A model generated the notes under the pieces. The model searched no databases and was not told the DNA's origin. It saw nothing but the letters and a program-made list of their open reading frames with translations. A stretch of DNA of 64,000 bases from Iphione sp. A-MEVVRFRX5 (Eukaryota), in NCBI GenBank assembly GCA_976226885.1, contig OZ320315.1, positions 68,324,001-68,388,000 on the forward strand, in the 5' to 3' direction. Numbering within the stretch: the stretch's first letter is position 1; each line of letters begins with the position of its first letter. The translations under genes were made by a program, and so were the position numbers. Shown in pieces: positions 1-13,280 of the stretch.

Positions 1-109
1 AAAACCGGAGGAAAAAAGTGGAAAGAAAATTTAAAAGAAAAAAGATACCCCCTCCCTCCCTACCTAGGCTTTTGGGTGGTCGTTACCAGAAACAAACCTT
101 TTTTTGGCC
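1..109. mobile_element. Right end of a PIF/Harbinger-like (Tourist-like) MITE, family A; runs off the window start
   Basis: Matches the right halves of 8430-8792 and 24383-24722. Ends ...GTTACCAGAAACAAACCTTTTTTTGGCC followed by TAA (110-112), the inverted counterpart of the left TIR GGCCAAAAAAATAAGTGTGTTTCTGGTAAC at 24383. Confidence 0.8.
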
Positions 110-902
110 TAAGATGGGTTCGAAAATAGCTATATATGAGGAGTCTGTTGCGAGTTGAGCCATTTTCCTACCGATTTTTACCAAATGCACCCGCCGGTGA
201 AGATCGTGCTGCCATCTGGTCTTGTGTCTCTCTGTATAGGTCATGCTTGACACAGCTATGTTTAGAAATCAGGGCTAAACCTCTTCATGTACCTGTATAG
301 CGGGAACAGCCTACGCCGTATGGTTACGCGTAAATCCCCTATTTACTACCCTTCATAGCTGAATTCTACTGGTGATTAAGTTTGCGATTCCCTTAAATCT
401 TTAAATCCTATATGTGTGACTGAGACTTTCCGAGAAGTATAGTCGGGTACTGAGGAACTTCTAATATTTTGTTTAATCTAAGGACCATAAAGTAAAAGTA
501 TATTTACTGTATGCTATTGCTAGTCCAACACGGGAAATCAAATACAGTAAGACTTGTCTGCTGCAGTCAATCTAAGATGAAAAAGACTTCTAGACTTCTA
601 GAAAACGTAAATATGAAACAACATGAACATCACACTTTGTATTATAGAAATCCATCTAGTGATGAACGTCTGGAATGGTAGGCTCCAGATAAACAGGATT
701 AAACTTACATAAACCACACTCTCCTAAACTTTTGTGATTTCTAATTTAACACTAACCATTCCTTATCTGTTGTCCCCAACAGGTTGCTTTCGGCCAGTTA
801 TGCAGAAAATTAGACACGAAAAGAAAGTCATAAACTACACCATTATCACCAGCACAGGTGTTTATTTAAAAAAAAATACATCATAGAAATAATTGCACAT
901 GG

Positions 903-1101
903 TTATTGACCTAATTGCACATAGATGTTATTATCTGCAGGTATGCCATAAGTGACATATTTCGAATCTTCAGGTTTGAAACATTAGAAAAAGAAAGGTT
1001 AAGGTAAAAGGTATCCAGAATTTGAACTAAGAAGGATTCTTCATATATGTGACTGACATATAGATGTATTAGGTTTGGAAGAAGAACACTTATCACAGAC
1101 A
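903..1101 (-). CDS. Tentative last two coding exons of the - strand gene: 1101-1058 (VCDKCSSSKPNTSI) and 967-903 (YSKYVTYGIPADNNIYVQLGQ*)
   Basis: A 90-nt intron with donor GTCAGT and a strong pyrimidine tract before the AG at 969-968. Phases match (2 in, 1 out, 1 in). Stop TAA at 905-903. Confidence 0.45.
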
Positions 1102-4100
1102 CTAATTTGCAAGGTTAAGGACTTCTAAATATCCTTGCATCCATTCCATGTTTATGCATCGATGCTAGATCAGAACACAAGGTATACGTGAAGGTTCACA
1201 AACACGTTTGTGATTAGACAGTAATAGTTAAATTCCGTATGGCTAATTGTCTTTATTGTCGGTATCACTTAGCATAGCCGACAAATTCACCTGTTTCATT
1301 GGCTCCCGGGAAACCTAATTTCTTTGTGCCAGACATGTTTTGGCTGCCCGGCGACCAGTATTAGTTAAATTCCGTATGGCTAATTGTCTTTATTGTCGGT
1401 ATCACGTAGCATAGCTGACAAATTCACCTGTTTCATTGGCTCCCGGGAAACCTAATTTCTTTGTGCCAGACGTGTTTTGGCTGCCCGACGACCAGTACTA
1501 GTTAAATTCAGTATGGCTAATTGTCTTTATTGTCGGTATCACGTAGCATAGCCGACAAATTCACCTGTCTCATTGGCTTCCGGGAAACCTAATTTCTTTG
1601 TGCCAGACGTGTTTTGGCTGCCCAGCGACGGGTCGATTAATGTAATACTCTTGTAAATAATAGCCAAAATTTTTTTACCATTCTTCCAGCCATAGCATCA
1701 CATAATATTAAACGTTATTGAAAATATAACTAGATACAAGTTTTGCCATTTTATACTCGTTCCAGTGAGTAAGCAGAAGTATAAAAATGGTTTAATCAAT
1801 GGCAAGAACTAATCAGTGAGAGAGTATGCATGGAAGTTTGAACAATGAAAACGAGTGAAGCACTTGCTTCGTCCTGAATTTGTTCCTAATTAATTGGGCT
1901 CAGAAATAAACATTTGATGCAATCACATGAAAATGGACACGGTGAAAATGAAGATCGGTGTGACTAACAGATTGATTTCTCTTGAAATTTCAGCCGGATG
2001 TTGTTTTGGTTCCAAAATGGTCCTACTACCATGGATTTAAAAGATTATGGTTGACCACAGTTATATTAAAAGGTATCTCTACAACTTCATGTTTTGCAGA
2101 TAATTTATAGTTTTCATGCTATAACAGATAAACTTTGGCCTGCATATTTTACAAATGTATCCGTACCAAAATAGCATTAGAATGTCCTAAATATTGCTCT
2201 TGAACTTCCTTACTGAGTTTATCTTTAGTACCATTGTGTATTCAACGAATAGGAACGGTCAAGCTCTTCTCTGAAGTGTTCTCCTTTGAAGTGTGTAGTG
2301 ATGATGAGGGTGGGAGCCAAAGGAAAGTTGGGTCTTTCCCATCCTCTAAATACACAACAGTACACTATGCCTCCGTATTATTCCCTTGAAAACTTTGAAC
2401 TCCCGATTCATGGAAAAATCAATGATTACATCAATTTGATGTGATTGTATGTTCGTGTACACGTCTGTTTAAGACATCATGTAAGGCTACATGTTTACAT
2501 TGTTAAACCTTTCGCTGACCAATCGTTGAAAGTGAAACTGTGAGAGGAAGACTATTTCTCGTCTTCATTCCTGAAATAAAAAGACAGACGATCAAATAAA
2601 CCAATCAGAATAGCCATGTTGGAAAATTTCAACGGTTTTGTAGGACAAATACAAACTGGAGGTATCACATTATTTTTCAATCATATACTTTCCACTAAAC
2701 GTTAACTTCATGTACGATGGTGTCTAAAACGTTAACATCAATTTTCATACTTTTTCACGGGTGAACCAGGTGAACCGTAGTACTTCTTGTAGCCTTCATG
2801 TCCTTTGTAATAACGGTCTGTAGAAGCTCTGAGTGACAAAGCAGAATAAAAGACATCAATACGAAGAAAAGGAGAACAATCTTTGGGGCTGTCTGCTAAT
2901 CATCTTACCAATAGTGAAGTCTCTAAGAGAGGTACGAGGATCTACATCATACCCTTATGAGCCAGGTATCCTGAAATGGTCCCTATCCATTATTAGGATG
3001 ATGCTGATAATCTCAGTCCTTGAAATCTTAGTCAGGGATGACTAACTTTCTTAGGTAAACTTAATGGTGCCAAAATGACCTAAGGCAAGTTAGTCACCTT
3101 AGTCTTGTATGACTATGAACATTAGTCACCTAATTTCCAGGAATATACATGTATACCTAGTGTTAGTTAAAATGACTAAGCTTATGTGTCAAAATGACTA
3201 ATCTCATATGTTTAAAGTTACTTATATGTTAGTCATCACAACTACAAGAATTTATATTTCTAGGAAATCTTTGACCTATGTATTAGTCTATTTTATTAAG
3301 TGAACATAGTCTCAAAAGACTAATGCCTTAAATTTAGATTCATGTTACAAGAAAATACAGTTAATATTATTTCAGCCGATCAGATCTAATCTTTCATATA
3401 AGTAATTGTCTGATTTGGATGTAACAAATGGCTTGAGAAAGCTCACAGCCCATGTGATAGGAATGTCCCATTTACTTGAGACAGCATTAACCTTTTCCTC
3501 AGAAAACTAACATTTATTCCATACCTATGCACAGATAGTCGCAAAATACCTCAAACTCACAGGGGTGCAGTAATGAAACTATAACGCATACTATGGAGCT
3601 TCGTATCCCAAACAAAATGCAACATGGTGCATCGATTCGAAACTTCGAAGGAAGGCTTCACATAAATCAAAATATCTCTATGTATAGAATTATGTCTGTA
3701 AAATAATTACAGTTATAGAAACTAACCTAACTAGTTCATTTAATAGCCATGTAACAACCTTCACATGCGTGGTTTGCTTCTTATATTAGATAGGTGCTGA
3801 TTATTTTTATATGTAGATGAATTGCGGTCCCCTTCCAAGATCTACTATTTACTATTTGATAAATATAACGATGGGGCATTCAGTGATAAAACCGGATTTA
3901 CACTTAAATTCTAGGGACAGTTCATCATGCAGGTATATGTTCCCAGAGGCAACCAAAGAAGGTTTCCCCATGAGGTGATGAAGGAGACATGTTGACTTAC
4001 CTTTCACTAATATTTCACTTATATGTAAACTATGCATGCAAGAACAAGAAACAGGCAGAGTATGCTGGGATTGAAGCATATACTTGGTCAGGTCTCAGTT

Positions 4101-7100
4101 TCATCCCAAACTCGGCCTTGCAGCCTCGGTCAGGATTCCTGAGATCTGACCTCGTATTTGCATTATTCCCAGAACACTTTACCCGTTTTGTCTTGAAAAG
4201 CAACAATAAAAGAATAAAAAGTTACAAACGGCCACAATGTAGGGTCAGTTGGATCACAGGAAACAAAGATTTTTTGACTAGGCCTAAACATACGGACACA
4301 GCTCCTACACTATAGGCTACATCAATAATGTCACCTCCGTTAAATAACTCCGCACCAGTGCATAGTTGACCAAAGATTAAAGAACAGCAGTAAAAGGCGA
4401 AACAAAGAATTATACGGTGACATGATGTTCAAAAAACTTAGTGTACATTTTTGTATAGAGAAAATAATATATTAGTCATTAGGAGGGTAGTACATCCACA
4501 GTAAAACTGCTAACGATGGGGTCATGTGGTGCTATGACTCCTCACAAAAGTGTGGACCTGTGAGGTCTAATGTCCCCCGCCATCAACTGTTCAGGTGGGT
4601 GGGAGATAAAGATAGAGAGAGTGTATGTGTGGTGTCTCTCTTTCTTTACAACCATCTTGATTGGCATCTCATTTTGGGGTAAGTGGTTGGGTTTGTTTAA
4701 GTCCTTCAGGTTTGCAACCCTCAGTTCTGCCTGACTGAGCACACTACCCTCAGTTCTGCCTGACTGAGCACACGACCTTCAGTTCTGTCTGACTGAGCAC
4801 CAGACTGCTACAAGCTGATACTGGCAGATGGGAGGTACTGGTGAGCGTCTGTGTGTGTATGTGTGTGCATTGTCAGACCTAGGTATTCCTAAAGCAGGTA
4901 TATATGTTTGAAGGTGTGTTAGCAAAAGAGTAAAATTGGGATAACTTCACCTTCAAAATACTTGAATTACTACCAAAATTGCCCAGTGCCATGGGCCCAT
5001 GTATGCAAGTATCATATATTAAAATCAGTGGTTTTGAGTGAAGAGTTTAAGAGTTATAAAACCCACAGGAATGTGATAGAAGGTCAGGACACCAGCCAGC
5101 AGCATTCCTAAGGTCCTCCCCCAACCTGTCTATGAGGTGGAGGACAATAATACATGATTAGCCTCTAGACTATTGACTAAATTGTTAATGCGACCCCCAC
5201 TGGCAGATTCCTGTACACGTTTGCGTCGATACATTTTCACTCACATTATTTTCTACCTTGAAACTGCAGACCACCGGACACGAAACGATATCATTCCAGA
5301 ATAAACATGATTTTAAAAATACAATGTCTAAATAATGGACCAACTCCCACACATTTTCTAAACGTTCATTCACCATTTGTCTAATTTTAGTTTAAGGTTG
5401 TTTAAAGAATCATTTAAATGATTCGAACGAATCTCTCTATTATTTGATAGAGAACATGAGAGAGAAAGTGAACAGCAGACCAAGACGTCGTTGTTGAGAC
5501 AAATGAAAACAGATATTGCCTCAGCAACCAAGAAAAGAGTTCTTCAGGTGGTCAGTGTTATCCAACAGGACACCTTGATGATCCCAGAACAGATCTCTTC
5601 ACGAGATGTATCTTAAACATAGGATCATATAAACTCTTCAGGAAGTCGGGTTTTCACATGCACAATCAACTTTTGTTGATTGAATGTTTGCGATCAGAAT
5701 TAAGGAGAATTGATTTAAGAAAATACTAGAATGATTAACATAAAGAAAACATTGCAGGTGGCTAAGTTCCATAATAGAAGTAACACCGCACGAAAATATG
5801 TATTGTAATAATTGAGCTGAATGGTCGGAGACGATGGGAGCGTGGTGTGGCTCTTGTCCGGAGACTCCGGAGCTATGCAGTACAAACTGATGGGTATCAT
5901 ATTATTGCGAATATCTGTAAAATTATATTTGGAATTTGGCTACCAAAAAACGATATAGTGATAAAGCATACTGTCAACTGCATTGAGGAAACAAGGGGGG
6001 CTTTGGCGACATGATGCCTCGAAATTTGTAACCTAAGGTCTTCATTTAAATAACGTCACTTGTCTATTTTTCATGATTTGCGACCATGACACCTTGCTAC
6101 ATATCTGAACAGGGCCCCGATGACATCCTTGGAGGTGGATCCAACCTATTCTCTGTCTCAGTTTTGTTGATCATATGCATATGATAATCATATGCCCCCA
6201 GTCCCATACCCAATATAACTAACAATTATATTGAAAGAGACGAATAGTTTGTCACCGACTAAAAAACGTGTGTAATTTTCCAGCGGAAAAAAGACTATGA
6301 AAACAAAATTGCTGAATAACGGTTGAATTAGTCATAAAGTGGAACTGAAATTTCCCTTGACACCTCTGTCGGATTACTGGTGCTCTTGTGGAACGTTTAT
6401 GTCATGTTTCAGACGTGTAATTCGTCATGACATAAATATTTGTGTATTTTCGCATTGTCACCATCCTCTGTGCCTTTAACATGTCAAGTCTTTTGCCAAT
6501 GATATACATGTAATTGTACCTGTAACACCACATTTCTTCGCTCCTATCTAGATAGAATGAGACTTACAGTTTGTTTTCGTCCTTCTCGTCGGCGGAATCT
6601 CGCGGTTCTTTATTGTGTTTGACGGAGCCGTCTCCATACCAGCGTTTGTAGCCCTCATGCCCCTTGAGGTAGCGCTCTCCTTCGCTCAGTGGTTTGGTTG
6701 GTTTACTTGACCCACTGGCAACGGTGTAGGAAAAAAGACCAAGTGAACACTTAAGAGAAGTCTAGGTATCTCTAATGCACCTACACGCTCATATTATGTG
6801 GTTACCATGTATAATTATGTGCAGTCGCCTATGCATGTATATTATCAAAGCAAGCGAAGAAAAATAACAAAATCGTTTTGATGAAAAATCTGTAATATAA
6901 AGGACAGCGACCGAAGCTATAGACGTAGTTCCTGTTTATCAACATATTCTGCACACCCACAGCGAGACACTTAATTGTGACTCAATCAATGTTGATGCAA
7001 ACGATCGTCCATCATTACGAGTACATACCCCACATCATCACATCATGATCTATCCACGCACTGTTTACCACGGATACGGTTCCACTGGTTCCGAGGGAGA

Positions 7101-7140
7101 ATATATCCAGTATGCCTTACCTTCCATCTGTGTTATCCAT
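903..7140 (-). CDS. Small spliced gene of unknown function with a repeated RY[LY]KGHEGYK motif (gene span; about 200-240 aa depending on exons included)
   Basis: ATG at 7140 has an in-frame upstream TAA and is followed by the donor GTAAGG. A chain of phase-compatible GT-AG exons runs 7140-7121, 6714-6568, 2828-2751, then tentatively 2345-2232, 2022-1969, 1101-1058 and 967-903 (TAA). Two exons encode the same peptide motif. Confidence 0.6.
1220..1630. repeat. Tandem repeat, 3 x 137 bp (intronic minisatellite)
   Basis: Units AGTA(A/T/C)TAGTTAAATTC... start at 1220, 1357 and 1494 and differ by only a few substitutions. Confidence 0.95.
1969..2345 (-). CDS. Tentative internal exons 2345-2232 (GWERPNFPLAPTLIITTHFKGEHFREELDRSYSLNTQ) and 2022-1969 (TILEPKQHPAEISREIN)
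   Basis: Both have AG acceptors and GT donors (GTACTA, which is weak, and GTTAGT). Lengths are 114 and 54 nt, both open in phase 2-2 as the flanking exons require. Confidence 0.35.
2751..2828 (-). CDS. Internal exon ASTDRYYKGHEGYKKYYGSPGSPVK
   Basis: Acceptor ...TTGTCACTCAG, donor GTATGA, 78 nt, phase 2-2. The peptide motif is shared with exon 6714-6568. Confidence 0.7.
4718..4800. repeat. Tandem repeat, about 3 x 29 bp
   Basis: CCCTCAGTTCTGCCTGACTGAGCACAC(T/G)A units at 4718, 4747 and 4776. Confidence 0.9.
6568..6714 (-). CDS. Exon 2: GSSKPTKPLSEGERYLKGHEGYKRWYGDGSVKHNKEPRDSADEKDENK
   Basis: Acceptor TTTTTTCCTACACCGTTGCCAG, consensus donor GTAAGT, 147 nt open, phase 2-2, GC-richer than its flanks. 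Confidence 0.8.
7121..7140 (-). CDS. First coding exon MDNTDG(S)
   Basis: ATGGATAACACAGATGGAAG|GTAAGG. In-frame TAA upstream of the ATG; the phase 2 end joins exon 6714 in frame. Confidence 0.65.
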
Positions 7141-8429
7141 TCTGTATCTGATGTGAGCTTAAACCGCACTGTCGGGCACACTTTCCTCTTCGTTCTTGCT
7201 TTGGTTGACCTGTGTAGGCGTGTGGCGATGACTGAAGTTCTGTTGTCGTCTGTGCTTCTTTTACTCGTGATTATGAGTGTGTGTCTCTTATTATTATATA
7301 GGACACCACTCCCCTAGTGTACGGGCTCTGACCTAGGAAACCTACTGCCTGTGCCAACCGAATGGAAGGATAGCGGTGACATGAATACACGCGGAGCTTT
7401 CCTTTACAAAAACAGCGACAATGACGCATCGCCAGCTAAGTATTTGAAAGGCCTCGTTAGATATCCCTGTATTCAACGCCATTCTAGAATGTACAAATAT
7501 AGTTAATACGAAGCCACCCAAACGCTCCGATATACCTGTGCATGACGATATCCATTTGAGCTGGCATGCACCAGCGGTATGCGCGACAGGCAACAATTTG
7601 GGGTTTGCTTGCCCTCCCTGAATATAAAAACTTAATGATCGTTCATACACCGTGAAAATATAGTTATGTCCAAGAAGTGCTTTGATAGCTAAAATATGTT
7701 CGGGAGACACATGGAGACGGCAACGCTGGCCTTAGTAGGAAGCTCTGAGTGGACCGGTAACCAGATCGCAAACTGCTCAGAGTCCCGGGTATCCAGGCCC
7801 GCAGTCCGCGAAAAACACGAGGAATAACCGATGATGAAGCGTGAAAAATTATATTCGTGCATTGCGGAACGAAAAGAAACTCCTTCTCAAACAAACCTCA
7901 GCTTTTGGAAGGGTTTCTTTATGACCGCCGACGCCGCCGACCCACTACCAAACGCAAATCAGCGCAACTAATTCCTTTCTCTAGAACAACCTGGCAGAGC
8001 AATGGATGACAGAACAGCCTCCTACAGGAATTGATACACTGTATTGTAGTGCGTTCTTGTTCAAGTATGGAAAATGCTCATGAAGATAATAAAGAGGCCA
8101 CACAACAGATCTAGTTCACTCAAAACATACAAAGCAACAAGTGTCTGTTTATTAGTTCAACTTCTTATATACAAATCACTTCCTAGTGACTTTCCCAACG
8201 AGTTTATATTTCGCGAGTACAGCTACAATGTAACATCTAGTGAAACCAAGATAAATATTAAACAGGTTGATTACAATAAAGCACTTTTGGAATATCACAA
8301 ATTGTTAGCACATTATTCATTAAGTTTTGTTTGAAATAACACAAAAAATACGGTGGCAGTGAATAGTTGCTAAGTATAAAATTTAAAATAAAGCATGCTA
8401 TAGGGCCAGTAAGCCTCATGACCTAGTTA

Positions 8430-8792
8430 GGCAAAAACAAATAGGTGTGTTTCTGGAAACCCACCCCTACCTAGTAAAACCTCACCCTACCTAAAAAAGT
8501 TTTGGCCCCAAAGAGTTTCCAAGGCTTAATTTCATTAGATACATGTATTCATGGCACATGTTTTCAGTAATGTTAATAGAAAAACAACAAAATCCATGGA
8601 AATTCTCCAAAAAACTGTAAAACTCATACAAATTGATCAAAATGTTTCTTATTGTCTTTATCATTACTGAAATCCAGAGGAAGAAAGTGGAAAAAAATTT
8701 AAAAAAAAAAGGTTACCCCCCTCCCTACCTAGGTTTTTGGCTGGCCGTGACCAGAAACACACTTATTTCTTTTTTTTTGGGGGGGGGGGGCC
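8430..8792. mobile_element. PIF/Harbinger-like MITE, family A (full copy)
   Basis: TIRs GGCAAAAACAAATAGGTGTGTTTCTGG and CCAGAAACACACTTATTTC...GGCC (a G-run expansion in the right TIR). Perfect 3-bp TSD TTA at 8427-8429 and 8793-8795. Homologous to 24383-24722. Confidence 0.85.
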
Positions 8793-8984
8793 TTAGAGGC
8801 TTGGGACACCCAATTATCACTCACCCTTAAGACAAGGAAGAGTAGTAGTATGCACAACATGCACTATATCATTTTCCTCTATCATTTACAGATTTTGAGC
8901 ATCAAATCAGTCATGATGTAGTGGACACAGAATCCTCTCTCTTAGTCACCATGTCCAGTACGTATTTCCTCACATTTCCTCACT

Positions 8985-9545
8985 TTGCCTTCCCTCCCTC
9001 CTTCCCTCTTTCCCTCCCTCCCTCTCTCCCTCCATCCCTCCCCCCCACCTACCTCACTCTCTCCTCCCTCTCTCCCTGTGTCTCTCCCTTCCTCTCTTCC
9101 AATCTGTACCTCCCTCTTTCTTCTTGACTATCCCTCTCCCATCCTCTCTCCTTCACTCTTTTCCTTCCTCTCTCCCTTTCTTTTCCTGTCCCTCTCCCTC
9201 TCCTCCACTCTCCCTCTCTCTGTCCCTTTTCATTCCCTCTCCCTCACACTGTCCTCTCTCCATATCTCCCTTTCTTTCCCTCTCTCTCCCTCCCTCTCTC
9301 TATCTCCGCCTATGTATCTATATATCTATCTCTTGGATGGGGAACTCCCTATGAAGATTTCATCCTGAGATAGTTTGGTTACAGAGAGAAAGAGATGGAG
9401 TGAGAGATACAGAGAGGGGAGGGAGCAGGAGGGGAGAAAAAGAGGGAGGGAGAAAGAGAGAATGTAGAAGGGAGAGAGGGAAATTCAGAGAGAGGTAGGG
9501 AGAGAAAAGGGGGAGGGGAAGAGAGAGAGGGAGAGAAAGAGTGAG
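8985..9545. repeat. Polypyrimidine (CT-rich, about 8985-9310) and polypurine (GA-rich, about 9380-9545) low-complexity tracts
   Basis: Base composition seen directly; the overlapping S/P/L-rich ORFs are artefacts of it. Confidence 0.9.
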
Positions 9546-9624
9546 ACTTTTACTTTTCCTTCCATTAGCAGTCCCTGTATGTTATTTCTCTAACCATCTA
9601 TAACCGATCTATTTTTTTAAAGTA

Positions 9625-9705
9625 GGCAGTATCAAGGGTTTATCTTGCTTGATCCTGCTTAAGACCTCTTCATTCTTGACTTTCTGTGTCCAAGATATTT
9701 TCAAG
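9625..9705 (-). mobile_element. Short RTE-clade-like LINE ORF2 C-terminal remnant
   Basis: The - strand reads LKISWTQKVKNEEVLSRIKQDKPLIL, resembling the ILxISWxxxVxNEEVL motif of RTE-type LINEs. Confidence 0.5.
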
Positions 9706-9759
9706 ATTTTTTTATGTTACAACAGTGTTGCATGGCTGTTGAATAATAAACTTGAGATA

Positions 9760-10240
9760 TGACAAATGCTTTATACAATCAAATTAGGGCTTGCCTAGGA
9801 AAATATGATCTGATTTTGTACATTATGTTAAATTTACTGGACATTGACCGTAAAACCCTTAGAGCTTCACGATTGAACTTCATATTCTTTTCAAAGATTA
9901 TACCTAAGTATGTATAACTAGTGACACACTCTATGCATTCATTCTTGATATACACTGAAGCTACTGCAGGCTCATCTGAGGGGAACATAGGTAGAATCTT
10001 AGTTCTGCTAGTGTTCGTAGTTAACCTATTATTTTCATCATCACACTACCACCCTGTCAACAGCCTTTTGAGTCTTTTTAACAAGTTCATTCAAGTCCTT
10101 GCTCATAGTGATAACTAGAGTGTCATCTGCAAACAAAGCGGTGTCAGATTTGACTGCAACAGGTAGGTCATTAATGTACATTGAGAAGGACAAAGGCCCA
10201 AGGGTTGAGCCCAGGGCACTCCGATGTCAATATTGCTAAG
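9760..10240 (-). mobile_element. Decayed CR1/L2-type LINE reverse transcriptase fragment
   Basis: IDIGVP-(frameshift)-GSTLGPLSFSMYINDLPVAVKSDTALFADDTL, then CIECVTSYTYLGIIFEKN...KIRSYFPRQAL. Confidence 0.8.
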
Positions 10241-10629
10241 CAATAATATTACAACATTTGCACCACAAAATTATGTCAATATTTTTGGTGGACATTCGTA
10301 ACTAGTTCAACTAGTATTCATTATCAGCAGGGATAGACCTGACTGAAGTGTGAATATTCCAACCAAAATTAGCAATAGATTACCCTAGGTTATGGGAAGT
10401 ACCATTTTCTGTTGACTAATCGTAAAGCTACCCAAATCTAATAGTTGAGATTAACTTTATAACCAGTATGGATGGCCATCTGATATAATGATTTCATTTC
10501 AATCTGTATTGCCTGGGGCCGCCTCATGGTGATATTCGGCCAAATCCAATTGTATATCTACTTGTACAACAAATCTATACAACTAGGTTAGAAGGAACTA
10601 TCAATATCTTAGAACAATTCTTAAAACAA

Positions 10630-13280
10630 ATCATGAAAGGACGTGTCTTTTGTTTTTGGAACATATGTAGTTTAATCTTAAAGCTGGAAGTAGTCAAATC
10701 ACTTCTGAGGGTGGTGGGGTCCTTTGTTATGTCCCTTCTAACATACACTCAGAAATGCTCAACAAAGATTGTATTGCTATTAATGACATGGAATGTATAT
10801 GGGTAAAGCTGCATGAACCACATAGAAAGACCCTAGTAATGGGAATGATCTATTGCCCACCACAAGGGGATTTGCATGAGTTGTATGCATACATAAAAGA
10901 TAAGATTGTGCAGTTTAAGCAGGAAGGAATTTCAGATATCATCCTGGGCAAAAACTTATTAACAGTCTAAATGACACAAAAAGCAAGAAAGAACTTCTGC
11001 GCCTCACAAATTCTCGTGGGTTGAATCAATATATTCATGAGCGAACTCTCATTAATGAGACTGCACTATCTTGTATTGATTTAATCTTTGCCATTTTAAA
11101 CACAATAAGTAGTAGTGGAACACTTGATGATGCTAGTAGTCATCATCTACCAACCCATGTGGTGGATAAGAAAGTAAGAGAGAGGGTCTGAAAGAAGGTA
11201 AAACAAGCAAGGGATTGGTCGAATTACTCTAAAACAATACTGTCAGAACATCTCTCTGACACAATAACAAACCTCGAGAATGATTCAGAAAATGGTGCGG
11301 AGATAAACTGGAGTTCCCTACAGGATGCCATCGAAAATGCGGTCACAATCCTGTGCCCCATTAAGAAGAGGATCCAGAAGGTGGGAGCTGAGTGGGTTGA
11401 CAGGGAACTAAGTGATTATTTTAGCAACAGGGATTACTTCCTTCAGCAGTTCAGAGCAACAGGTAATAAAGATTACTTTAGAATGTACAGATTTTACAAG
11501 TCTAAAGCAAAGAGGCATTGTTAAAAATTTAAAAAGTCATATTTTGCAAATAGACTGAGAATGTGTAGCGATACTCAGGAGTACTGGAATGTGATTAACA
11601 GCTTAATCCTGAAGAGGGATAAGACCTCACAGGAAATCAAATTAAAAGACAACAATGTTTGGGTAAGCTCAGATAAAGTCTCTCATATTCTAAATGAATA
11701 CTTCACCACACAACCAAAATCACTTGCAAGTAAGTTAACTGTAGTGACTAGTGACATAGACTACAATGCCAAGGGTTGGGAGCTAAGACCAGTGCATACA
11801 GGTGATGTTGTTAAGGTAATATGCAATCTTAGGTGCAACAAACCAAGTGGGTTTGATAACATCCCAATGAGAGTACTAAAAGAGGCACTACTCCTTGGAG
11901 AAAACGTAGTTCGAGATATCTTTAATGACTCAATAGGAAGTTCCTCAATTCCAAGTACATGGAAAATAGCCTGTGTATCTCCACTTTTCAAAAAGGGCTC
12001 ATCAACAGATAAGAAAAATTACGGACCAGTTGCCATCCTGCCTGTAATAGGCAAAGTCAAGAAGAGGCTAGTCTACAATCAGATGGCCGCTTATCTGGAT
12101 AGCATAAACTTTTTCAGTAAACTACAACATGGCTTCATGAAGGAATGAAGCACTGCCACAGCAGCTGCAGGCCTGTTAATGAATATACTAGAGGCGGTCA
12201 ATGACAATAGGCATGTGGGAGCAGTCTTTGTAGACATGACCAAGGCCTTTGATGTGGCTAATCACAACTTAATTTTGGATAAATTGGCAAAGGCTGCAAT
12301 AGGGGGGAAGACCCTTGAGTAGATGAGCTCCTACCTCAGAAATAGACATCAGTTCATAAGATGTAATGGTACATCATCTGACTTAAGAGACTTGGACCTA
12401 GGGGTTCCCCAGGGGAGCATGCTAGGTCCATTTCTCTTCAGTGTGTTGATCAATGATCTACCTGACTCACAGATAGTAATAAATTCCATCATGTATGCGG
12501 ACGATGTGACAGTATATGCAGTAGCATCAAATATGACAGCATTAAGATTGAAACTACAATGGGGTCTCCGAGATGTTGCTGACTGGATGGCAGGGAATGG
12601 CTTAATAATTAGTCCAGAAAAAAATACTACATGCTATTTGGAAAAAGCAGGCAATTTGACCTAGACCTAGCATTTGAAGGTAAGTCTCTACTAAAATGTA
12701 AAGAATATAAATTCTTGGGATTCCATTTGAATGATGCTCTTAACTGGTATTCACTTTCAGACCAACTTTGCAGAACTACCAGGAGTCGGGGGTACTATCT
12801 AAACAAAATGGCATGGCGTCTACCATTCCAAGATAAAGGTAGACTATTCAAGAGTTTCCTGTTGTCTCTGTATGACTAAAGTCTACCGTTTATAGCTGGA
12901 GGCAATAAGAGAGTGATGGACGAATTGCAGATTAACTGCATCAGGGTTATGCAAAACATGACAATTGGTAAAAGGTGTTAGATTCAGTCCAATATCTCAA
13001 TTCGAAGGAGGTTGCATCTGGAGTCACTCCAAGTGTGAGGGACTAGACTAATGTTGTGTCTGATTCATAGGCTTTACTTGATTGGACTATTGAAGGAGAA
13101 AGCCAGGAAAGGGAGGGCAAGGACAAGGTTGAGCTTGGAACGAGTACTGAATGTAAGTAAACCATGAACATCTATTTACAGGACATCTTTTTATATGCAG
13201 AGATAGAGCTGAGCAACGAATTGCTGGTGGCCATCAAACCTAAGTGGCATTCAAGCGTCGACTAACGAGGATGGCGCCAA
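10630..13280 (+). mobile_element. Decayed CR1/L2-superfamily LINE ORF2 (APE endonuclease plus RT) with stops, frameshifts and deletions
   Basis: Endonuclease motifs WNICSL, GGGVLCYV, ECIWVKL..GMIYCPP, SCIDLIF. RT motifs KPSGFDNIP, VSPLFKKG, LQHGF, VFVDMTKAFDVANH, GVPQGSMLGPFLF..INDL, MYADD, YKFLG. In-frame stops at about 12146 and 12319; frameshift near 12640. Confidence 0.92.

What the first reader, a model, noticed from the sequence alone, without database searches (positions are those of the whole stretch)
2751..7140. Hidden - strand gene with a duplicated RY[LY]KGHEGYK[RK][WY]YG module in two separate symmetric exons
Seen: exon 6714-6568 encodes ERYLKGHEGYKRWYG and exon 2828-2751 encodes DRYYKGHEGYKKYYG, 3.7 kb apart. 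Both have good splice sites and are phase 2-2. The peptide is conserved while synonymous positions differ (e.g. GGG CAT GAG GGC TAC AAA versus GGA CAT GAA GGC TAC AAG), which is the signature of purifying selection on a protein motif. None of this appears in the ORF track. I do not recognise the motif. Inference: an exon-duplicated short linear or repeat module. Short Y/G-rich repeats in small disordered proteins occur in axonemal microtubule-inner and sperm proteins, but I cannot assign this one to that class.
Basis: partly seen in the sequence, partly recalled or inferred. Interest (0 to 1): 0.7.

Follow-up and report, generated by a model that had tools for sequence, protein, structure and literature searches.

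The report
Unannotated small gene, twice-repeated peptide motif
A small, probably real but unannotated four-exon gene of a marine-worm-type invertebrate encodes an 87-residue water-loving protein carrying two copies of a 15-residue tyrosine/lysine/glycine motif that matches nothing known, so it is a candidate new small-protein family whose expression and function are still unproven.

Summary
Both lie on the minus strand in phase 2-2 exons with canonical splice sites. They share 11 of 15 residues, and 8 of the 11 shared residues use different codons.

The "purifying selection" argument is partly circular. A peptide match this strong appeared somewhere in 3 of 12 random 64-kb sequences.

The gene reading rests on independent signals:
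- Exon 2 is a compositional outlier.
- A top-0.1% donor follows the only ATG downstream of a TATA box.
- A top-0.1% acceptor 180 nt past exon 3 opens a short terminal exon I found (2570-2552, ...KNEDEK*).
- The exon DNA is single-copy.
- The 5' half sits in a CpG-rich island between CpG-poor, repeat-bearing flanks.

The model is 4 exons and 87 residues, hydrophilic, with no signal peptide.

Pfam, the PDB, two word searches, a 1.84-billion-protein phmmer search, a metagenome scan and the rest of this genome gave no credible relative. The axonemal or sperm-protein idea has no support. No RNA run was listed, so splicing is unproven.

Best reading (about 0.7): a real, lineage-restricted small disordered protein with two copies of one docking motif.

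The parts
7294..7300 (-). TATA-like box (TATATAA), 160 nt upstream of the ATG; the likely core promoter
   Evidence: It is the only TATAWAW on the minus strand between 7700 and 7100. The background rate is 0.87 per kb per strand, so this is weak support on its own.
7121..7140 (-). Coding part of exon 1: ATG GAT AAC ACA GAT GGA AG (MDNTDG plus 2 bases), then donor AAG|gtaagg
   Evidence: It is the only ATG between 7330 and 7138 on this strand, with A at -3 and G at +4, and an in-frame stop lies 7 codons upstream. The donor scores 11.4 bits, in the top 0.1% of all GT in the window.
6568..6714 (-). Exon 2, 147 nt, phase 2-2; carries module 1 and an acidic/lysine tail (…DSADEKDENK)
   Evidence: T content is 11.6% against 27-36% in the flanks, in the lowest 0.2-0.6% of 147-nt windows. 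Codon-position bias: A2 52% (top 0.5%), T2 6% (bottom 0.5%), G1 38% (top 2.8%). The stretch is unique in the genome.
6633..6677 (-). Module 1: ERYLKGHEGYKRWYG
   Evidence: AlphaFold2 on the single sequence places a helix over residues 11-26 of the exon peptide; mean pLDDT is 89 for residues 11-20 and 78 for 21-30.
2829..6567 (-). Intron 2 (3,739 nt), enlarged by at least two interspersed repeats (3004-3478 and 4544-5160)
   Evidence: There are hundreds to thousands of copies elsewhere at 73-91% identity. The stretch 5165-6570 is unique.
2751..2828 (-). Exon 3, 78 nt, phase 2-2; carries module 2
   Evidence: The acceptor is in the top 4% of AG and the donor GTATGA in the top 11% of GT. The stretch 2560-2990 is unique in the genome.
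2774..2818 (-). Module 2: DRYYKGHEGYKKYYG
2552..2570 (-). It completes …VK-K-NEDEK* and gives 87 residues in all
   Evidence: The acceptor gtctgtctttttatttcag| scores 11.0 bits, in the top 0.09% of all AG. The acidic tail NEDEK echoes DEKDENK after module 1. This exon is inferred, not shown.
2738..2750 (-). Alternative ending if the exon 3 donor is not used: read-through …VKKYEN, with the stop at 2740-2738

Best explanation
A real, single-copy, unannotated protein-coding gene lies on the minus strand.

Model:
- TATA box near 7300.
- Exon 1 ends at 7121, with the ATG at 7140.
- Exon 2 is 6714-6568.
- Exon 3 is 2828-2751.
- A short terminal exon begins at 2570, with the stop at 2554-2552.

The product is an 87-residue, very hydrophilic protein: K 14, G 11, S 9, E 9, D 8, Y 8, and no C, F, I or Q. 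It has no signal peptide or membrane segment.

It carries two copies of a 15-residue aromatic-basic motif, R-Y-x-K-G-H-E-G-Y-K-[RK]-[WY]-Y-G. Each copy is followed by a Gly/Ser stretch and then an acidic/lysine tail. The two copies arose by an old internal duplication of a motif-plus-tail unit. Only the motif has been kept.

Inferred mechanism, not shown: the protein is mostly disordered. Each motif is a short docking element, possibly an amphipathic helix with a Tyr/Trp/His face that forms on binding. The protein would then act as a bivalent adaptor or clamp, engaging two copies of one partner or two neighbouring sites on a repetitive surface such as a polymer lattice or nucleic acid.

Shown: the sequence features, the splice signals, uniqueness in the genome, and absence of known relatives.
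Inferred: transcription, splicing, translation and function.
For: - Both motif exons are present, on the same strand, in the same phase, with canonical AG/GT borders.
- A profile of the module finds only these two places in 1.18 Gb.

Signals independent of the motif match:
- Exon 2 has 11.6% T and 52% G+C against T-rich flanks, in the lowest 0.2-0.6% of windows.
- Its codon-position biases are typical of hydrophilic coding sequence and lie in the top or bottom 0.5-3% of 639 background open segments.
- The exon 1 donor is in the top 0.1% of GTs. The acceptor at 2570 is in the top 0.09% of AGs, 180 nt beyond the exon 3 donor and in a phase that gives an acidic tail like the one after module 1.
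- The ATG at 7140 is the only ATG in the 190 nt below a TATA box, has a good Kozak context, and has an in-frame stop just upstream.
- CpG observed/expected is 0.76-1.1 across 5100-8100. It is 0-0.6 in the flanking windows up to 12000, which hold low-complexity and repeat-related sequence.
- Exon regions are unique, while the long intron holds two high-copy repeats.
- The two exons do not align as DNA (score 27; the highest score among 200 shuffles was 30). The shared peptide therefore does not reflect a recent copy.
Against: - There is no RNA evidence. No run was listed. I asked with a 5.8-kb stretch that is about 96% intron, so that blank says little.
- No relative was found among proteins of 26-114 residues sharing three 5-residue words.
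- The phmmer search of 1.84 billion representatives gave only three hits that I take for unrelated: a 2,596-residue protein with a tape-measure domain, a 523-residue repetitive Arg/Ala/Ser/Gly/Pro-rich protein with no credible Pfam domain, and a DUF3761 protein.
- An old duplication predicts orthologues in related species, and none was seen.
- The gene itself is absent from those collections, so no pipeline has called it.
- A peptide pair of this score occurs by chance in about a quarter of random 64-kb sequences when every frame is compared with every other.
- By a generic splice matrix, the internal splice sites are only moderate (top 4-13%).
- No AATAAA or ATTAAA lies within about 750 nt of either candidate stop.
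Confidence: 0.68

Rival explanations
1. No gene. The two peptides are a chance protein-level match between open stretches of non-coding DNA that happen to have splice-like borders, or they are relics of a gene that is now dead.
For: - The all-against-all null gives a pair of at least 32.3 bits in 3 of 12 random windows.
- Synonymous differences are automatic for a match chosen at the protein level.
- No homologue, no annotation and no RNA were found.
- A third place in the genome (G000:C1:150556365, VRYRKGHEGYKEE) shows that near-copies of the core can occur in a non-exon context with a stop nearby.
Against: Chance must also supply several things at once:
- same strand and 3.7-kb spacing (about 0.06);
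- two compatible AG…GT frames;
- a top-0.1% donor right after a lone ATG;
- a top-0.09% acceptor 180 nt downstream;
- a 147-nt stretch in the 0.2-0.6% tail of composition whose edges coincide with the splice sites.

My rough product of these factors is far below 1e-6 per window. That figure is an inference that assumes the factors are independent. All frames and sites are intact.
Confidence: 0.12
2. The gene is real, but the two motif exons are alternatives (either one or the other is used), giving two very small isoforms with one module each.
For: - Both exons are phase 2-2 and multiples of three, so any combination stays in frame.
- They share a homologous core.
- Earlier notes on this genome report such pairs in other genes; I did not test those notes.
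Against: - The lengths differ (147 and 78 nt).
- Homology covers only 15 codons, at different offsets in the two exons.
- The exons are 3.7 kb apart.
- The products would be only about 61 or 38 residues.
- From general knowledge, either-or exon pairs are usually of equal size and homologous throughout.
Confidence: 0.08
3. The two exons belong to a different or larger transcript than modelled. One version has another first exon, possibly with a signal peptide, which would make a secreted Tyr/Lys/Gly/His-rich protein of the adhesive or cement type. Another has further exons beyond 2552.
For: - Exon 1 holds only 20 coding bases.
- Two other ATG-started segments upstream end in phase-2 donors and carry hydrophobic stretches: 7482-7346 and 8860-8763.
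- GYKKYYG-like strings occur in mussel foot proteins (from memory, not tested).
- The nearest polyadenylation hexamer is about 750 nt past the stop.
Against: - 8860-8763 overlaps a stretch (8670-8768) that is 77-79% identical to window 1-103, so it is repeated sequence.
- 7482-7346 lies upstream of the TATA box, and its donor matches the consensus less well (5 of 6 positions).
- The donor at 7121 is by far the strongest nearby.
- The 20 kb to the left of the window shows only transposon-like reading frames and no further module.
- The acidic tails do not fit adhesive proteins.
Confidence: 0.1

Closest known systems
Small axonemal microtubule-inner and sperm proteins with short Tyr/Gly-containing repeats
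   Same: Small, hydrophilic and largely disordered, with a short repeated motif ending in Y-G.
   Different: No sequence match was found to any chain of the PDB at E up to 10, with either exon or with a two-copy profile. No Pfam family matched. The resemblance is in style only.
Bacterial DUF3761 (PF12587) C-terminal motif C-K-G-H-G-G-V-K-E-W-Y-G
   Same: A repeat protein carrying this motif was one of three phmmer hits (E = 6.4e-5, summed over 3 stretches). It shares K-G-H-x-G-x-K-x-W-Y-G with module 1.
   Different: I take the hit protein for bacterial, because DUF3761 is a bacterial family (my own knowledge) and the library carries no names. In the hit a Cys precedes the motif in each of the three repeats; the worm motif has no Cys. 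The score comes from adding three short repeats. The worm exon does not match the Pfam model at E up to 10. I take it as convergence or chance.
Tyr/Lys/Gly/His-rich secreted adhesive proteins of mussels and tube worms (from memory; not tested with a tool)
   Same: Local composition. GYKKYYG-type strings are rich in Tyr, Lys, Gly and His.
   Different: The modelled protein has no signal peptide. It has only two motif copies, and they are separated by acidic linkers. No word-sharing protein of 26-114 residues was found.
Hexapeptide-repeat acyltransferases of bacteria (…R-Y-P-K-G-H-E-G-Y-K-K-T…)
   Same: The exact string KGHEGYK.
   Different: The context is a folded bacterial enzyme with no similarity outside 9 residues. 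These were the only recurring hits of the metagenome pattern scan, and they are unrelated.

Membership tests
   Exon 2 as protein, and 6450-7350, 2560-2990 and 5165-6570 as DNA, match only themselves in 1.18 Gb. The module profile finds only the two modules. Repeats are confined to the intron: 3004-3478 and 4544-5160.
Axonemal microtubule-inner or sperm small proteins | Sequence similarity to a known member (many are chains of solved axoneme structures) | tested here: not met
   phmmer and hmmsearch against 177,635 distinct PDB sequences gave 0 hits at E up to 10. Pfam gave 0.
Axonemal microtubule-inner or sperm small proteins | Expression in testis or ciliated tissue and location inside doublet microtubules | not testable with these tools
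   No RNA run was listed.
DUF3761 (PF12587) | A match to the Pfam model at or above its cut-off | tested here: not met
   hmmscan of both exon peptides at E up to 10 gave no family. The motif-level likeness to P0003 rests on three summed short stretches.
Secreted Tyr/Lys/Gly-rich adhesive proteins | An N-terminal signal peptide | tested here: not met
   The modelled N-terminus, MDNTDG-S-GSSKPTKPLSEGE, is hydrophilic. Other upstream first exons with hydrophobic stretches exist but are less well supported.
Mutually exclusive exon pair | Two adjacent exons of equal or near-equal length, same phase, homologous throughout | tested here: not met
   The phase is the same. The lengths are 147 and 78 nt, homology covers only 15 codons, and the exons are 3.7 kb apart. 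Exclusive use itself cannot be tested without RNA.
Expressed spliced protein-coding gene | Spliced transcripts across the predicted junctions | not testable with these tools
   The look-up of sequencing runs listed no run.
Expressed spliced protein-coding gene | Open frames, canonical splice sites in compatible phases, a start codon with promoter context, and coding-type composition | tested here: met

The most novel reading that the evidence does not exclude
The gene founds a previously unseen family of small disordered proteins, conserved in at least part of the annelids or lophotrochozoans. Its defining element is a bivalent 15-residue motif, R-Y-x-K-G-H-E-G-Y-K-x-x-Y-G, that docks onto a repetitive cellular structure, for example a cytoskeletal lattice. 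Annotation pipelines have missed the family because its exons are tiny.
Probability: 0.25. Interest if true: 0.55.

Novelty: new member of a known kind. Interest (0 to 1): 0.35.

Why it matters
If it is expressed, this is a gene that standard annotation misses. It has four exons of 19 to 147 coding bases and no long open frame. Its strictly kept, duplicated 15-residue motif has no counterpart in Pfam, in the PDB or among 1.84 billion representative proteins.

The find would add a concrete, testable example to the poorly charted class of lineage-restricted small proteins. The motif could also serve as a handle for finding a binding partner.

It does not bear on a long-standing open question, and its function is still a guess.

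Tried and rejected
Searches that led nowhere:
- Pfam and PHROGs scans of the exon peptides: nothing.
- ESM Atlas by features: no usable hit.
- Three word-index protein searches: exon 2; the exon 2 open frame, reaching proteins of 36-114 residues; the exon 3 open frame. No candidate in any.
- phmmer of exon 2 against 1.84 billion representatives: three hits, all of which I take for unrelated. They were a 2,596-residue protein with a tape-measure domain, a 523-residue repetitive Arg/Ala/Ser/Gly/Pro-rich protein with no credible Pfam domain, and a DUF3761 repeat protein.
- PDB sequence searches with each exon and with a profile: nothing.
- Full-text paper search for the core string: nothing.
- Metagenome scan for Y-x-KGHEGYK: 14 loci, nine of them bacterial hexapeptide acyltransferases and the other five with stops next to the match or no wider similarity.
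- Genome-wide degenerate pattern for KGHEGYK: two extra places. One has stops on both sides. The other (VRYRKGHEGYKEE, on contig C1) has a weak acceptor and an early stop, and did not appear among the module profile's matches at E up to 10. I treat it as chance or a relic.
- A scan for further modules in the window and in the 20 kb to its left: none.
- Rfam and tRNA scans of 1-9000, looking for an intron-hosted RNA: none.
- Pfam on nearby long reading frames: none.

Arguments dropped:
- The third-codon-position bias (P about 3e-4). I do not count it as independent proof of selection, because it follows from choosing a protein-level match.

Steps not taken:
- Only single exons were used, by reference.

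Full report
**1. What is in the sequence**

On the minus strand, exon 6714-6568 is 147 nt long. It lies between ...ccgttgccag| and |gtaagt, and reads GSSKPTKPLSEGERYLKGHEGYKRWYGDGSVKHNKEPRDSADEKDENK.

Exon 2828-2751 is 78 nt long. It lies between ...tgtcactcag| and |gtatga, and reads ASTDRYYKGHEGYKKYYGSPGSPVK.

Both exons begin with one base that completes a codon and end with two bases of the next codon.

ATG 7140, followed by 20 coding bases and the donor AAG|gtaagg, joins exon 2 in frame. The split codon AG+T gives Ser.

The two 15-residue cores share 11 residues and 29 of 45 bases. Eight of the 11 identical residues use different codons. The window has no N.

**2. Is it more than chance?**

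With the 15-mer as query, the next best match in all six frames of the window is 7 of 15. With exon 2 as query, the match to exon 3 has E = 1.4e-5 against 94 kb, made up of the window and flanking loci.

If every frame is compared with every other, however, a pair of at least 32.3 bits appeared in 3 of 12 random order-2 Markov sequences of 64 kb. The peptide match alone could therefore be a chance find.

The position-3 bias has P about 3e-4, but residues chosen for being identical can differ only at silent positions.

I therefore looked for signals that do not depend on the match.

**3. Independent exon and gene signals**

(a) Composition.
- Exon 2 has 11.6% T and 52% G+C. Its flanks have 27-36% T. 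This puts it in the lowest 0.2-0.6% of 147-nt windows outside the giant exon of the neighbouring gene.
- In its reading frame it has 52% A and 6% T at codon position 2, and 38% G at position 1. These values lie in the top or bottom 0.5-3% of 639 background open segments.
- The composition changes at the splice sites.

(b) Splice sites, scored with a generic matrix against all GT and AG in the window.

| Site | Rank in the window |
|---|---|
| Exon 1 donor | top 0.1% |
| Exon 2 acceptor | top 13% |
| Exon 2 donor | top 4.4% |
| Exon 3 acceptor | top 4% |
| Exon 3 donor | top 11% |
| Acceptor at 2571/2570 | top 0.09% |

It lies 180 nt beyond the exon 3 donor, in gtctgtctttttatttcag|GAATGAAGACGAGAAATAG.
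- In the phase left by exon 3 it reads K-NEDEK-stop.
- This acidic tail resembles DEKDENK after module 1. The duplicated unit may therefore have been motif plus tail.

(c) Promoter context.
- TATATAA lies at 7300.
- The only ATG between 7330 and 7138 is the one at 7140, with A at -3 and G at +4.
- An in-frame stop lies 7 codons upstream.

(d) CpG content.
- CpG observed/expected is 0.76-1.1 from about 5100 to 8100.
- It is 0-0.6 in the windows from 8100 to 12000, which hold low-complexity and repeat-related sequence, and 0.1-0.2 in the intron repeat at 4544-5160.
- The 5' half of the model thus lies in a CpG-rich island, as expected near an active promoter. That last step is an inference.

(e) Copy number.
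- Exon 2 as protein, and 6450-7350, 2560-2990 and 5165-6570 as DNA, match only themselves in the 1.18-Gb genome.
- A profile of the two modules (alignment A1) finds only the two modules.
- Intron 2 is 3,739 nt long and holds two interspersed repeats, at 3004-3478 and 4544-5160. Each has hundreds to thousands of copies elsewhere. This explains much of the 3.7-kb distance between the exons.

I multiplied rough probabilities for same strand and spacing, compatible splice frames, the two very strong outer splice sites and the composition outlier. The result for chance is far below 1e-6 per window. This is my own estimate and assumes independence.

**4. The model**

The model has four exons: 7140-7121 (coding part), 6714-6568, 2828-2751 and 2570-2552. 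Together they encode 87 residues.

- Counted exon by exon, the composition is K 14, G 11, S 9, E 9, D 8 and Y 8, with no Cys, Phe, Ile or Gln.
- There are 18 basic and 17 acidic residues.
- There is no hydrophobic stretch, so no signal peptide and no membrane segment.

If the exon 3 donor is not used, the frame ends ...VKKYEN, with the stop at 2740-2738.

The nearest AATAAA or ATTAAA hexamer lies at 1796. The 3' end is therefore undefined.

**5. Age of the duplication**

The two exons with their flanks do not align as DNA. The best local score was 27, against a maximum of 30 in 200 shuffles.

Outside the 15-residue core, only a loose G-S-(P)-V-K and the acidic tails correspond.

If the gene is real, the duplication is old and only the motif has been held. 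This predicts orthologues in related species.

**6. Relatives**

None was found.

- Pfam: no family at E up to 10.
- ESM Atlas: no usable hit.
- The word-index searches covered proteins of 26-114 residues: no candidate.
- phmmer of exon 2 against 1.84 billion representatives gave three hits. Each score is built from several short stretches.
  - One is a 2,596-residue protein with a tape-measure domain.
  - One is a 523-residue repetitive Arg/Ala/Ser/Gly/Pro-rich protein with no credible Pfam domain.
  - One is a DUF3761 repeat protein with the string CKGHGGVKEWYG.
- All PDB chain sequences: no hit at E up to 10 with either exon or with the profile.
- The metagenome scan for Y-x-KGHEGYK found nine bacterial hexapeptide acyltransferases. 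The other five loci have stops next to the match or no wider similarity.
- No paper holds the core string.

The gene itself was not returned by any protein search, so it is unannotated in those collections.

Limits:
- A 48-residue, mostly disordered query cannot reach relatives that keep only one 15-residue motif.

**7. Structure hint**

AlphaFold2 on the exon 2 peptide alone (single sequence) gives a helix over residues 11-26, which is the motif. Mean pLDDT is 89 for residues 11-20 and 78 for residues 21-30. The rest is coil.

On a helical wheel (my own calculation, no tool call), Y, Y, Y/W and H fall on one face, with Lys, Arg and Glu on the others.

Nearly every motif position is invariant between the two copies, the glycines included. 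The constraint is therefore not limited to one face.

This is a weak lead, not a result.

**8. Reading**

Best explanation, about 0.68: a real, lineage-restricted or so far unannotated small disordered protein with two copies of one docking motif, acting as a bivalent adaptor. The function is inferred from architecture only.

Rivals:
- Chance or a dead relic: 0.12.
- Either-or use of the two motif exons: 0.08.
- A different or longer transcript, possibly secreted: 0.10.

The axonemal or sperm idea remains possible but has no support from any test run here.

**9. RNA**

The look-up of sequencing runs listed no run. I asked with 5.8 kb that is about 96% intron.

Several earlier notes on this genome also say that no RNA data could be obtained. 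One note reports RNA evidence for another gene.

Those notes suggest an annelid-type invertebrate. I did not verify the taxon.

**10. Verdict**

The gene reading is likely. The functional class is unknown.

The find is of modest interest: a plausible hidden small gene with a new motif, awaiting RNA and cross-species evidence.

Noticed in passing
window 4544-5160: An interspersed repeat of about 610 bp inside intron 2. The first look found over 11,000 candidate copies in the genome, and the 40 scored were 78-85% identical. It contains three tandem 29-nt units at 4717-4803. No tRNA-like head was found by ARAGORN.
   Followed up: partly
window 3004-3478: A second interspersed repeat family in intron 2, about 475 bp. 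It has roughly 500 to 1,600 first-look candidates, and the scored copies were 73-91% identical.
   Followed up: partly
window 1219-1629: Three tandem copies of a 137-nt unit, 95-96% identical, each carrying an AATAAA on the minus strand. They lie downstream of the modelled gene.
   Followed up: no
window 1-103 and 8670-8768: Two copies, 77-79% identical, of a short sequence that flank the whole locus in direct orientation. They are probably members of another repeat family.
   Followed up: no
window 8988-9310 and 9416-9546: A long pyrimidine-rich (CT/CCCT) low-complexity tract, followed by its purine-rich complement. Together they form imperfect inverted repeats just upstream of the CpG-rich island.
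   Followed up: no
G000:C1:150556365-150556385 (L002/L009), minus strand: A third genomic occurrence of the core, reading VRYRKGHEGYKEE, in a 24-codon open stretch. It has a weak acceptor and an early stop, and it did not appear among the module profile's matches at E up to 10. It is either chance or a relic of a related exon.
   Followed up: partly
L006 and L008 (G000:C4:68304001-68324000): The 20 kb to the left of the window holds many long reading frames of a transposon-like kind on both strands, and no evident host gene.
   Followed up: no
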